Source: Lama guanicoe (taxonomy: Eukaryota). From it: 64,000 bases of DNA. Under the pieces are notes generated by a model. It did no database searches and was not told where the DNA came from. It was given only the letters and a program-made list of their open reading frames with translations. The stretch lies in NCBI GenBank assembly GCA_013239625.1, contig MU054338.1, positions 5,866,724-5,930,723 of the forward strand. The letters are read 5' to 3'. This document shows, piece after piece, positions 21,201-24,200 of the stretch (positions within the stretch are counted from its first letter, which is position 1; each line of letters opens with the position of its first letter). Both the position numbers and the translations under genes were made by a program.

Positions 21201-24200
21201 CACACTATACTTGCTGCTCTGTAAATGGACTTCTCTTCCCCCCACTTCACAATACTCGCCACTGTTTCGAGGGAATAAATATACACGTCCACCATTTTTT
21301 AAACAGCTGCAGAGTTTCATTGTTGGGCTGGACCACAGTTAATGACATGAATCGAAAGATCGTAATAATACGTGTCTAATTCACAACTAAGAGAGGTGCT
21401 TTGAGAGGGGAACTGGGGGTAAGGGTGGAGGACCAAATTCAGACAGGAGAGGACAGGGAGGGTATTTCAACTAAGACCTGGAGAAGAAAGGCAAGGAAGA
21501 GCGTTTCAAGAACAGGGAACAGCAAGTGCCAAGGCCCTGAGGCTGGAGTACACCTAGTATGTTTACGGAACATGGAGGAGGCCCATGGCTGGACAAGAGA
21601 TACTGAGAGGGCCACTGGGCAGAGATGAGGGCAGCGAGGTGATGGAGCAGGTTGTGCAGGGCCTTGTGGGCCATGGGAAGCACTTTAACTCTGAGGAAGG
21701 TGGGATCCACAGAGGTTCTAAGCAGAGTGGGGATGTGACCTGGCTCAGATGAGCACAGGCGCCCTCTGACTGCTGTTGTAGGAGAGGACCACAGCCTGTT
21801 GGGGGCAAGGGTGGCCAAGTAGACCAGGGCAGAGACTGCTGCACTCACTGGTCTGGGTGAGCAATCGTAGGGCAGTGGATGGGGAGAGATGTGTATGGAT
21901 CCTGGATGATGAGGAACGTGGAGTCCATAAGATGGATGGTGGTTGGATGTGGGAGTGACAGACTGAGATATCAAGGACAACCCAAGGCTGGGAACCTGAG
22001 CACCCAGGAGGACCCAATTGCCATTACTGAGTTAGAGCAAGTTGGGGTGCTGAGTGTGACCCCCCCATGAAGGCTCCTTGTGGGACACTTGGAGGCAAGG
22101 GTCACACAAATGTGCAACTCAGGGGCCAGGCCCATGCTGAGGACAGATAGTTGGGGGTCTCAGGGTTGAGCTGGGGGATGAAGGATCTGAGTGACCCTGA
22201 CGGGCCCAGTGTAGTCGGGAAGAGAAGGGGCCAGCATCCCAGGTTCACTTTCCAAAGGGGTGAGACCTGTTAACGTTGATGGAGAACATGAGTTAGAGGT
22301 GTGAGGGGTTGTGGGGTCCCCAGGGAGACATGTGGCCCCAGGGGCACAGCTCCTTTGACCTCCTCGGGCGGTGGGTCCCTCTGACCACTCTTCAGGGCCA
22401 GCCAGGTTGTCTTCATCACAGCCATGCCCCCCCCACCAAGCCCTGGTCGACCCCACCTACCTCCCAAGGTGACTACTCACAGTATTTGCTGAGTAAACGG
22501 ATGAGGGATTTCGGTTGCTCAGTGGTGGTTTGGATGTGGCCTCCTTCTCCCCATCTGGGAAATGGATCTTGCCCTCACCCCTGTTCGCCTGACCCCCTCC
22601 CCCAGGTATCCTATGCCAGACCTAGCTCTGCCTCCATCCGGGATGCGAACCTGTACGTAAGCGGGCTCCCCAAGACCATGAGCCAGAAAGAGATGGAGCA
22701 GCTCTTCTCCCAATACGGTCGCATCATCACTTCTCGCATCCTGGTGGACCAGGTCACAGGTCAGGCTGCCCAGGAGGGCGCACCTGGCTGGGGAGCTGGG
22801 CAGAGGCATAGAGATGGGACCAGAGTGGAGAAACAGGGAAAAGCGGCGGGGAGGGGGAGGGATCACGCAGGAAGGGGCGGGATCTCCATGACGCCCTTGC
22901 GCCCGGCAGGTGTCTCTCGGGGTGTGGGATTCATCCGCTTTGACAAGAGGATCGAGGCCGAGGAGGCCATCAAAGGACTGAACGGGCAGAAACCGCTGGG
23001 CGCGGCCGAGCCCATCACAGTCAAGTTTGCCAACAACCCGAGTCAGAAGACCGGGCAGGCCCTGCTCACTCACCTCTACCAGTCCTCCGCCCGGCGCTAT
23101 GCAGGCCCCCTGCACCATCAGACACAGCGCTTCCGGTGAGCCCCCTGCCACTCCCTTCCCCCCAGGCTTACAGCTGCCCTCTCCCAACCCCATTTCTGCA
23201 GGGTGGAAAAACACCAGGACACTCAGGGGCTGCTGAGGGCAGCAAAGAGGAAATGTGGGGGCCTGTCAGGGCCTGAGGTCTGGCCCTTGTATACAGCAGG
23301 TGCTCAATGTGTGCAGGCCATACCGAGTGGCATTACTGGCGCCAAGAGTTTTAGAATCACTTGATCGGATCGGCTCTGACTGGCCCCACCTCCGCCTCGG
23401 GCACCTGCAGGCCAGGCACCCTTCCTTATTCTGCACAGCAACCGGGTCAGAGGCATTGTCAGTTGCCTGGCCCAGACACTGCGGAGGGGAGGCTCCAAAC
23501 TTTCCTTCTGGGGACCCAAACCCTGCCCGGGGGGAGAAGGGCAGGCGATCCAGGCTGGGTGGCCAGGAGGGGGAAGACGAGGACTCCAGTGCAGGCCGGG
23601 CAACAGCCGGGCAGGCGAGAGGCAGTGCCTGAGTGACTGCGGTTCCGTGCCAGGCAGTGTCCAGCCGGGCGGGGAGCGGGCAGGCAGGCAGGCAGGCGGG
23701 GGCAGGGCTGATGCTGCTCGACTGCTGGGTGGGGGCGGGGAGGGCAGGCTGACTGCCCATCGTCACAGCCGAGGGGCGTGCCCAGAAGCCACCAGTGACC
23801 ACCCCTTCTGTCTCCACAGGCTGGACAGTTTTCTCAACATGGCCTATGGAGTCTAGAGGTAATAGTGCCCCCGCCCCGCTGCCCCCAGCCCCTCTCCCTT
23901 CCTCGTTGGACTCTTGCCCTGATGGACCCCTCTCCCACTTCACCCCAGACTGCCTCTGTCTTGGAGTAGTGTGGCCATTAAGACATTTGGGGGCTCTTGA
24001 GCCTAGTACGTGCCTAGAAAGAGCTACTACAAAACTGGACCTGGGAGGTTTGTCTGGCCCTCTCTATCCCATTGAAAGGCAGACAGTGTTGCCCAGGTCA
24101 CAGCTGTGCCCCACTGGCCCCACTGTTGCTCATCTTTACTGAGGGTCACAGAATGCCCCCTTCCACCTCGTAGTCAGGGATGAACCCTGAGGCCCCCACG

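What the first reader, a model, noticed from the sequence alone, without database searches (positions are those of the whole stretch)
23820..23858. ELAVL3/HuC hinge exon 6 carries a premature stop and looks released from selection
Seen: the 39-nt exon keeps AG/GT ends but reads [14 protein letters not shown]. Recalled: HuC has LDNLLNMAYGVK here, so N>S, L>F and K>stop fall within 13 codons while the rest of the protein is essentially invariant (only one other difference noticed, G>A near the N-terminus). The equivalent hinge exon is alternatively spliced in Hu proteins, and the hinge affects localisation. Inference: either the exon is constitutively skipped in this lineage (in-frame, 354/347 aa), or inclusion gives a 249-aa RRM1+RRM2 protein without RRM3. 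The stop is only 2 nt upstream of the last exon junction, so the 50-nt rule predicts NMD escape. That would be a lineage-specific, splicing-switchable truncated HuC.
Basis: partly seen in the sequence, partly recalled or inferred. Interest (0 to 1): 0.85.

Follow-up and report, generated by a model that had tools for sequence, protein, structure and literature searches.

The report
Stop codon in camelid HuC hinge exon
In this camelid genome the small, optional 39-base "hinge" exon of the neuronal RNA-binding gene ELAVL3 (HuC) carries a stop codon and two other changes, while the rest of the gene is untouched; most likely the exon is dying and is simply skipped, but I could not check reads or RNA.

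Summary
ELAVL3 lies on the + strand (CDS about 18.6-25.4 kb). Its only copy of cassette exon 6 (23820-23858) keeps its AG and GT ends and reads [15 protein letters not shown], with the TAG 2 nt before the last exon junction.

Genomic ORFs of four other mammals and two dromedary gene models all read LDNLLNMAYGVK there. 333 residues compared outside exon 6 match the dromedary model exactly (3 of 12 codons changed against 0 of 333). The decay is therefore specific to this exon and arose after the split from the dromedary.

Published work shows that mouse HuC exon 6 is an alternative cassette and that isoforms lacking it are active. Exon-6-less models are annotated in deer, lemming and aye-aye.

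Best reading (about 0.55): a decaying cassette exon, with the gene working through in-frame skipped isoforms (354/347 aa by arithmetic).

The truncated 249-aa "switch" protein is possible but untested. It is also less special than claimed, because intron-6 retention gives every mammal a similar ORF.

Interest is moderate.

The parts
18627..18846 (+). ELAVL3 coding exon 2 (QILGAMES...KIT-G), start of RRM1. Its acceptor is a NAGNAG tandem (cag|cag, 18621-18629).
   Evidence: Pfam RRM_1 hit. Identical to dromedary model P0158.
19130..19233 (+). ELAVL3 exon 3 (rest of RRM1).
   Evidence: Identical to the dromedary model. The 24 intron-derived residues upstream (19060-19131) are identical to the aberrant insertion in the dromedary GenBank models.
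22606..22759 (+). ELAVL3 exon 4 (start of RRM2).
   Evidence: Pfam RRM_1 hit. Identical to the dromedary model.
22962..23135 (+). It holds the end of RRM2 and the constant 5' hinge, and ends TTC CG|gtga.
   Evidence: Identical to the dromedary model.
23780..23819 (+). Last ~40 nt of intron 5: polypyrimidine tract and AG acceptor of exon 6. It translates identically ([13 protein letters not shown]) in this window and in four other mammals.
23820..23858 (+). Cassette exon 6 (39 nt) of ELAVL3/HuC, reading (R)[11 protein letters not shown]-stop.
   Evidence: It is the only copy in the window.
23828..23833 (+). AGT TTT: the derived Ser and Phe codons (ancestral Asn-Leu). They create a U-rich run, GUUUUCUC, inside the exon.
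   Evidence: Other mammals imply AAC/AAT plus CTG/TTG here (antisense ORFs).
23854..23856 (+). In-frame TAG replacing the Lys codon, 2 nt upstream of the exon 6 donor.
   Evidence: Other mammals read ...GVKR-stop.
23859..25025 (+). Intron 6. It starts gtaata, so AG|gtaa gives an in-frame stop if the intron is retained.
   Evidence: Rat 251-aa model P0274.
25026..25046 (+). Segment 7a (21 nt, (S)PLSLIA), included when the upstream alternative acceptor of the last exon is used.
   Evidence: PMC3643579.
25047..25377 (+). Last exon from the downstream acceptor to the TGA stop (25375-25377): constant 3' hinge plus RRM3.
   Evidence: Pfam RRM_1 3e-22. Identical to the dromedary model.

Best explanation
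This is a real, lineage-specific decay of the alternative cassette exon 6 of ELAVL3 (HuC) in a camelid other than the dromedary; I infer a South American camelid, but that is not shown. The gene itself is intact and under strong constraint. It most likely works through exon-6-skipped mRNAs that join exon 5 (ending at 23135) directly to 25026 or 25047. Inferred order of events: exon 6 inclusion fell first, perhaps because AAY-YTG became AGT-TTT and put a U-rich run into a 39-nt exon. The coding content then drifted and picked up the TAG. Any residual inclusion would give an NMD-insensitive mRNA for a 249-aa RRM1+RRM2 fragment, as a by-product rather than a designed product. Shown: the sequence, its uniqueness, the ancestral state in relatives, and the exon-specific excess of changes. 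Inferred: fixation in the lineage, skipping, and the order of events.
For: The exon sequence and frame come, and it is the only copy in the window. Four other mammals' genomic ORFs share the identical upstream intron translation but read LDNLLNMAYGVKR-stop. Dromedary models KAB1259647.1/P0157 and P0158 carry the intact exon, yet share with the window a 24-residue intron-derived stretch and all 333 other residues compared. The peptide is near-invariant across vertebrate ELAVL2/3/4. Three separate changes in 39 nt beside a perfectly conserved flank argue against a single consensus error. Mouse HuC has four isoforms, with or without exon 6 and with or without 7a. All four regulate splicing and self-interact (PMC3643579), and HuC exon 6 'appears to be alternatively included' (PMC2887941). 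Exon-6-less models are annotated in Cervus, Lemmus and Daubentonia. RRM3 was required for every splicing target tested (PMC3643579), so a gene this constrained could hardly tolerate a stop in a mostly included exon.
Against: There is no read-level check of base 23854 and no RNA junction evidence. Both splice sites and the conserved upstream intron flank are intact, so nothing in the sequence shows that the exon is not used. In mouse and human the named major isoforms (367 and 360 aa) include exon 6. N>S also occurs in some fish ELAVL3 (LDSLINMAYGVK), so two of the three changes might be tolerated in a used exon. The state in other camelids apart from the dromedary is unknown.
Confidence: 0.55

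Rival explanations
1. The TAG is not a fixed feature of the lineage. It is either a consensus or assembly error, or an allele private to or polymorphic in the sequenced animal. The N>S and L>F changes may still be real, and exon 6 may still be a used coding exon in most animals.
For: No raw-read support could be obtained. No ORF from this lineage's contigs at this locus is in the protein collection. Pattern scans found no independent copy. Another note on this genome reports an assembly-type frameshift (s1-861144, unchecked). The word shares of 0.92-0.93 in 14 DNA runs cannot resolve one base.
Against: An A>T substitution outside any homopolymer is not a typical assembly error. It sits in an exon that already carries two other unique replacements, while the adjacent intron is unchanged. 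That pattern is what relaxed constraint predicts. The 4-kb haplotype is nearly invariant across five organism labels and seven studies.
Confidence: 0.22
2. Exon 6 is still alternatively included, and inclusion is used to make a stable, NMD-immune mRNA for a 249-aa HuC with RRM1+RRM2 but no RRM3. That protein would act as a regulated competitor or dominant-negative of full-length Hu proteins.
For: Both splice sites and the conserved acceptor flank are intact. The TAG is 2 nt from the last junction. RRM1 and RRM2 suffice for RNA binding, while RRM3 and the hinge are needed for self-interaction and splicing regulation (PMC3643579), so a truncated form could plausibly interfere.
Against: There is no RNA or protein evidence. 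N>S and L>F in an otherwise invariant peptide point to loss of constraint, not to a conserved new product. Every mammal can already make a near-identical ORF by retaining intron 6 (rat 251 aa), so the stop adds no new capacity. A dominant-negative fragment of a strongly constrained neuronal regulator would be expected to be selected against.
Confidence: 0.12
3. The stop is recoded. A-to-I editing of UAG to UIG (Trp), or translational readthrough, restores a full-length exon-6-containing HuC.
For: ELAVL3 is expressed in neurons, where ADAR activity is high (general knowledge). There is nothing specific in the sequence.
Against: The 221 nt around the exon fold no better than shuffled sequence (z = +1.2; 174 of 200 shuffles fold at least as well), so no editing duplex is apparent. 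UAG followed by AG is not a known high-readthrough context (general knowledge).
Confidence: 0.03

Closest known systems
Mouse HuC splice variants sv3/sv4 (exon-6-skipped isoforms; PMC3643579)
   Same: Same gene, the same 39-nt cassette exon and the same 7a alternative acceptor. The skipped products are in frame, and in mouse they are active in splicing regulation and self-interaction.
   Different: In mouse the exon is coding and optional. Here inclusion cannot give a full-length protein, so skipping would be obligatory for function.
HuR/ELAVL1 hinge (no exon 6 equivalent is ever included; PMC2887941)
   Same: The skipped product joins ...QRFR directly to FSP..., the HuR-type junction. This shows that an ELAV protein can work without these 13 residues.
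   Different: HuR is a different, ubiquitously expressed paralogue. Here the state arose secondarily in a neuronal paralogue.
Intron-retention ORFs of ELAVL3 in other mammals (rat EDL78240.1, 251 aa ending GVKR; Fukomys XP_019064671.1, 237 aa ending RFR)
   Same: They encode the same RRM1+RRM2-only product as the predicted 249-aa protein. They arise because both hinge introns begin with an in-frame stop.
   Different: Those need intron retention. Here a normally spliced, exon-6-included mRNA would give the truncated ORF.
HuD/ELAVL4 exon 6 regulation by Hu proteins (PMC2887941)
   Same: It is the paralogous 39-nt exon, alternatively spliced, with conserved flanking intron sequence.
   Different: HuD relies on conserved AU-rich intronic blocks bound by Hu proteins. 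The authors found no such blocks around HuC exon 6. Regulation of the HuC exon is unknown.

Membership tests
ELAVL3 / HuC gene | Three RRM domains with a hinge between RRM2 and RRM3. | tested here: met
   Pfam RRM_1 hits on the exon 2, exon 4 and last-exon translations.
ELAVL3 / HuC gene | Orthology to named ELAVL3 proteins rather than to ELAVL1/2/4. | tested here: met
   333 residues are identical to 'ELAV-like protein 3 [Camelus dromedarius]'. The HuC-specific SPLSLIA 7a segment is present.
HuC alternative cassette exon 6 (sv1-sv4 system) | A 39-nt exon between exon 5 and the last exon, flanked by AG and GT, followed by a dual acceptor 21 nt apart. | tested here: met
   compared with PMC3643579.
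HuC alternative cassette exon 6 (sv1-sv4 system) | Both included and skipped mRNAs are present in this species. | not testable with these tools
Lineage-specific exon loss (decaying or pseudo-exon) | The coding capacity of the exon is broken while the rest of the gene is intact. | tested here: met
   TAG at 23854-23856. All other exons are open and identical to the dromedary model.
Lineage-specific exon loss (decaying or pseudo-exon) | An excess of replacements in the exon relative to the rest of the gene, and relative to the same exon in other lineages. | tested here: met
   3/12 against 0/333 codons. Dromedary and four other mammals have zero changes.
Lineage-specific exon loss (decaying or pseudo-exon) | The defect is fixed in the lineage and the exon is absent from mature mRNA. 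| not testable with these tools
The scans were blank.
NMD-escaping premature stop (last-junction / 50-nt rule) | The stop lies less than ~50-55 nt upstream of the last exon-exon junction. | tested here: met
   The TAG ends 2 nt before the exon 6 donor. The next exon carries the normal stop at 25375-25377. That it is the last exon is inferred from the known 7-exon structure, not tested.
NMD-escaping premature stop (last-junction / 50-nt rule) | A stable transcript and a truncated protein are actually observed. | not testable with these tools
   This needs RNA-seq and Western blot or mass spectrometry.

The most novel reading that the evidence does not exclude
Exon 6 has been converted from a coding cassette into a splicing-controlled truncation switch. 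When included, it yields an NMD-immune mRNA for a 249-aa RRM1+RRM2 HuC that binds targets but cannot multimerise or regulate, so it tunes neuronal Hu activity in this camelid lineage.
Probability: 0.1. Interest if true: 0.7.

Novelty: new member of a known kind. Interest (0 to 1): 0.4.

Why it matters
The 13 residues of exon 6 (LDNLLNMAYGVK) are almost invariant across vertebrate ELAVL2/3/4. They carry the dominant anti-Hu autoantibody epitope (PMC7425417). Their function is still called unknown in the splicing literature (PMC3643579). A healthy lineage in which HuC cannot use this exon would be a natural experiment. It would show that the exon is dispensable in HuC, presumably backed up by HuB and HuD. 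It would also give a system in which the sequence changes that silence the exon (AGTTTT, TAG) could be tested in minigenes. If the TAG proves polymorphic or an error, the finding shrinks to two unusual replacements in a conserved peptide.

Tried and rejected
A second call laid beside them was blocked by the cap. So there is no base-level or junction evidence.

By oversight, (an Rfam scan of the whole window by reference) included them. The local scripts also read the whole window file. deliberately left those places out.

4. Exact-pattern scans for the derived exon with N at the stop position found nothing in metagenome contigs or genome contigs. A camelid-specific intron anchor also found nothing.

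5. The antisense 225-aa ORF search found only three distant mammals and no camelid. Neither the antisense frame (CTA/CTT, both Leu) nor the +3 frame (TCT/TCA, both Ser) can tell TAG from AAG.

6. Templated mutation: no copy of 9 nt or more of the derived segment lies within 5 kb.

7. Editing rescue: no stable structure.

8. A hidden intact exon 6 copy: none.

9. Naming the species: not possible. The ORFs P0001-P0004 and P0332-P0334 come from ENA/Logan contigs of unknown hosts. I cannot exclude that one is human. I used only the returned translations and looked up none of their contigs.

The lengths 354, 347 and 249 aa are arithmetic from named isoforms.

Full report
**What is in the sequence**

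The window carries ELAVL3 (HuC) on the + strand. Stop-free stretches and motif mapping give these coding exons:
- exon 2: 18627-18846
- exon 3: 19130-19233
- exon 4: 22606-22759
- exon 5: ending at 23135
- last exon: stop codon at 25375-25377

Translations of exon 2, exon 4 and the last exon hit Pfam RRM_1.

Between exon 5 (...TTC CG|gtgagc) and the last exon lies a single 39-nt exon at 23820-23858. It reads ccccttctgtctccacag|G CTG GAC AGT TTT CTC AAC ATG GCC TAT GGA GTC TAG AG|gtaatagtg.

The last exon has two acceptors 21 nt apart, at 25026 (T CCC CTG..., the SPLSLIA segment) and at 25047 (G TTC TCA...).

The frame is therefore ...[15 protein letters not shown]-stop. The TAG is at 23854-23856, 2 nt before the donor. 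Skipping the exon keeps the frame with either acceptor. No other exon-6-like sequence exists in the window, at protein or DNA level.

**Is it more than chance, and what was the ancestral state?**

I searched the sense-frame ORF that ends at the TAG (window:23647-23853). It returned four genomic ORFs from other mammals (ENA/Logan contigs, hosts unknown). All four end ...[27 protein letters not shown]-stop.

The window reads ...[25 protein letters not shown]-stop. The 13 intron "codons" just upstream are identical in all five sequences, and the sequences diverge further upstream. Only the window's exon differs: N>S, L>F and K>stop.

A search with a full-length ELAVL3 representative found two GenBank models named ELAV-like protein 3 [Camelus dromedarius] (P0157 = KAB1259647.1, and P0158). 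These models contain an aberrant intron-derived insertion, [24 protein letters not shown]. That insertion is identical to the window at 19060-19131, so the window is a close relative of the dromedary. The same models carry an intact exon 6 (RFRLDNLLNMAYGVKSPLSLIA).

Outside exon 6, all 333 residues I compared are identical between the window and the dromedary model. Three of 12 codons changed against 0 of 333 gives a Fisher p of about 3e-5.

Across all proteins fetched, LDNLLNMAYGVK is by far the commonest form. Only some fish show variants, including LDSLINMAYGVK.

The A form is shared by dromedary, elephant, bat, bear and serow.

**How many base changes?**

Antisense ORFs of three other mammals imply AAC or AAT for the Asn codon and CTG or TTG for the Leu codon. 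AGT TTT therefore needs 2 to 4 base changes within six adjacent bases, plus the A>T of the stop. That makes 3 to 5 changes in 39 nt.

On a camelid branch, neutral drift would give roughly one change (my estimate from general knowledge of camelid divergence). The exon is therefore at least as fast as neutral, and possibly faster. No donor template for a templated multinucleotide change lies within 5 kb.

**Which animal?**

Earlier notes of this scan call the genome a camelid, and the dromedary insertion match agrees.

Exon 6 differs from the dromedary at several bases while everything else compared is identical. In addition, 14 DNA runs under five organism labels all hold 0.92-0.93 of the 31-mers of 22900-26900. 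From these two points I infer a tight species group other than the dromedary, most plausibly the South American camelids. This is inference, not a result.

**What is known about this exon**

PMC3643579 states that mouse HuC exists as four isoforms. They differ by cassette exon 6 (39 nt) and by the 21-nt 7a segment from an alternative acceptor. That paper reports:
- All four isoforms regulate test exons and self-interact.
- RRM3 is required for every splicing target tested.
- RRM1 and RRM2 carry RNA binding.
- Deleting the hinge did not change HuC localisation.

PMC2887941 says that HuC exon 6 "appears to be alternatively included", that HuR never includes an exon 6, and that no conserved AU-rich blocks flank the HuC exon.

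PMC7425417 maps the dominant anti-Hu epitope to QRFRLDNLLNMAYGV, that is, to this exon.

Exon-6-less ELAVL3 models are annotated in red deer (RFRFSP), lemming, and aye-aye ([13 protein letters not shown], 354 aa).

Both hinge introns begin with in-frame stops (CG|gtga and AG|gtaa). This explains the annotated 237-aa (Fukomys) and 251-aa (rat, seen on 20 contigs) RRM1+RRM2-only ORFs.

**Most likely mechanism**

ELAVL3 is intact and strongly constrained, but its optional exon 6 has lost coding capacity. The simplest reading is that the exon is now mostly or always skipped in this lineage and the gene works through sv3/sv4-type isoforms. Lengths of 354 and 347 aa follow by arithmetic from the 367- and 360-aa isoforms.

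I infer that inclusion dropped first. The new GUUUUCUC run in a 39-nt exon is a plausible exonic silencer (general knowledge, untested). The stop then arose in an exon already free of constraint.

Residual inclusion would give an mRNA that the 50-nt rule predicts to escape NMD, encoding a 249-aa RRM1+RRM2 fragment. I regard this fragment as a by-product. I give this reading about 0.55.

**Rival readings**
- The TAG is an assembly error or a non-fixed allele: 0.22. No reads were seen, but an A>T outside a homopolymer, in an exon with two other unique replacements, is not a typical error.
The splice sites and the conserved flank are intact. But the replacements indicate relaxed constraint, and intron retention already offers all mammals a near-identical ORF.
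- Recoding by editing or readthrough: 0.03. The region folds no better than shuffles (z = +1.2).

**What could not be done**
- Scans of metagenome and genome contigs for the derived exon and for a camelid-specific anchor were blank.
- No ORF from this lineage's contigs at this locus is in the protein collection.

One oversight has to be declared. Nothing from there was used.

The hosts of the ENA/Logan ORFs used for comparison are unknown. I cannot exclude that one is human, and I fetched none of their contigs.

**Verdict**

Exon-specific decay since the split from the dromedary is well supported. Fixation, skipping and any truncated protein remain untested.

It is a new example of a known kind of event, the lineage-specific loss of an alternative cassette exon. 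It gains some interest because the exon is so deeply conserved and its function is unknown.

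Noticed in passing
window 18621-18629: The exon 2 acceptor is a NAGNAG tandem (tctccag|cag|ATACTC). It accounts for the MVT(Q)ILGAMES isoform pairs, for example the dromedary models of 389 and 390 aa.
   Followed up: partly
window 23134-23139 and 23857-23862: Both hinge introns start with an in-frame stop (CG|gtga and AG|gtaa). 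Retention of either intron gives an RRM1+RRM2-only ORF. Such ORFs are annotated in Fukomys (237 aa) and rat (251 aa, on 20 contigs).
   Followed up: partly
window 23780-23819: The last ~40 nt of intron 5 translate identically in this camelid and in four other mammals, while sequence further upstream diverges. This may be a conserved regulatory or acceptor element of the cassette exon.
   Followed up: partly
window 19060-19131: The dromedary GenBank ELAVL3 models (KAB1259647.1 and its partner) include 24 residues read from the end of intron 2. This is an annotation artefact, and it served here as a camelid marker.
   Followed up: yes
window 22297-23136: A 280-codon stop-free stretch runs through exon 4, intron 4 and exon 5 in one frame. 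Retention of intron 4 would stay open.
   Followed up: no
window 3928-3983, 17810-17881, 35113-35185, 40153-40225 (+): Four tRNA-like Rfam matches at or above the gathering score. They are probably tRNA-derived SINE copies rather than tRNA genes.
   Followed up: no
window about 25412-25450: A (GA)n microsatellite lies about 35 nt after the ELAVL3 stop codon, at the start of the 3' UTR.
   Followed up: no
window 3784-3927, 4086-4229, 8967-9098, 11936-12115, 16503-16634, 27679-27810: Six runs of N (132-180 nt each). None lies between exon 5 and the last exon.
   Followed up: no
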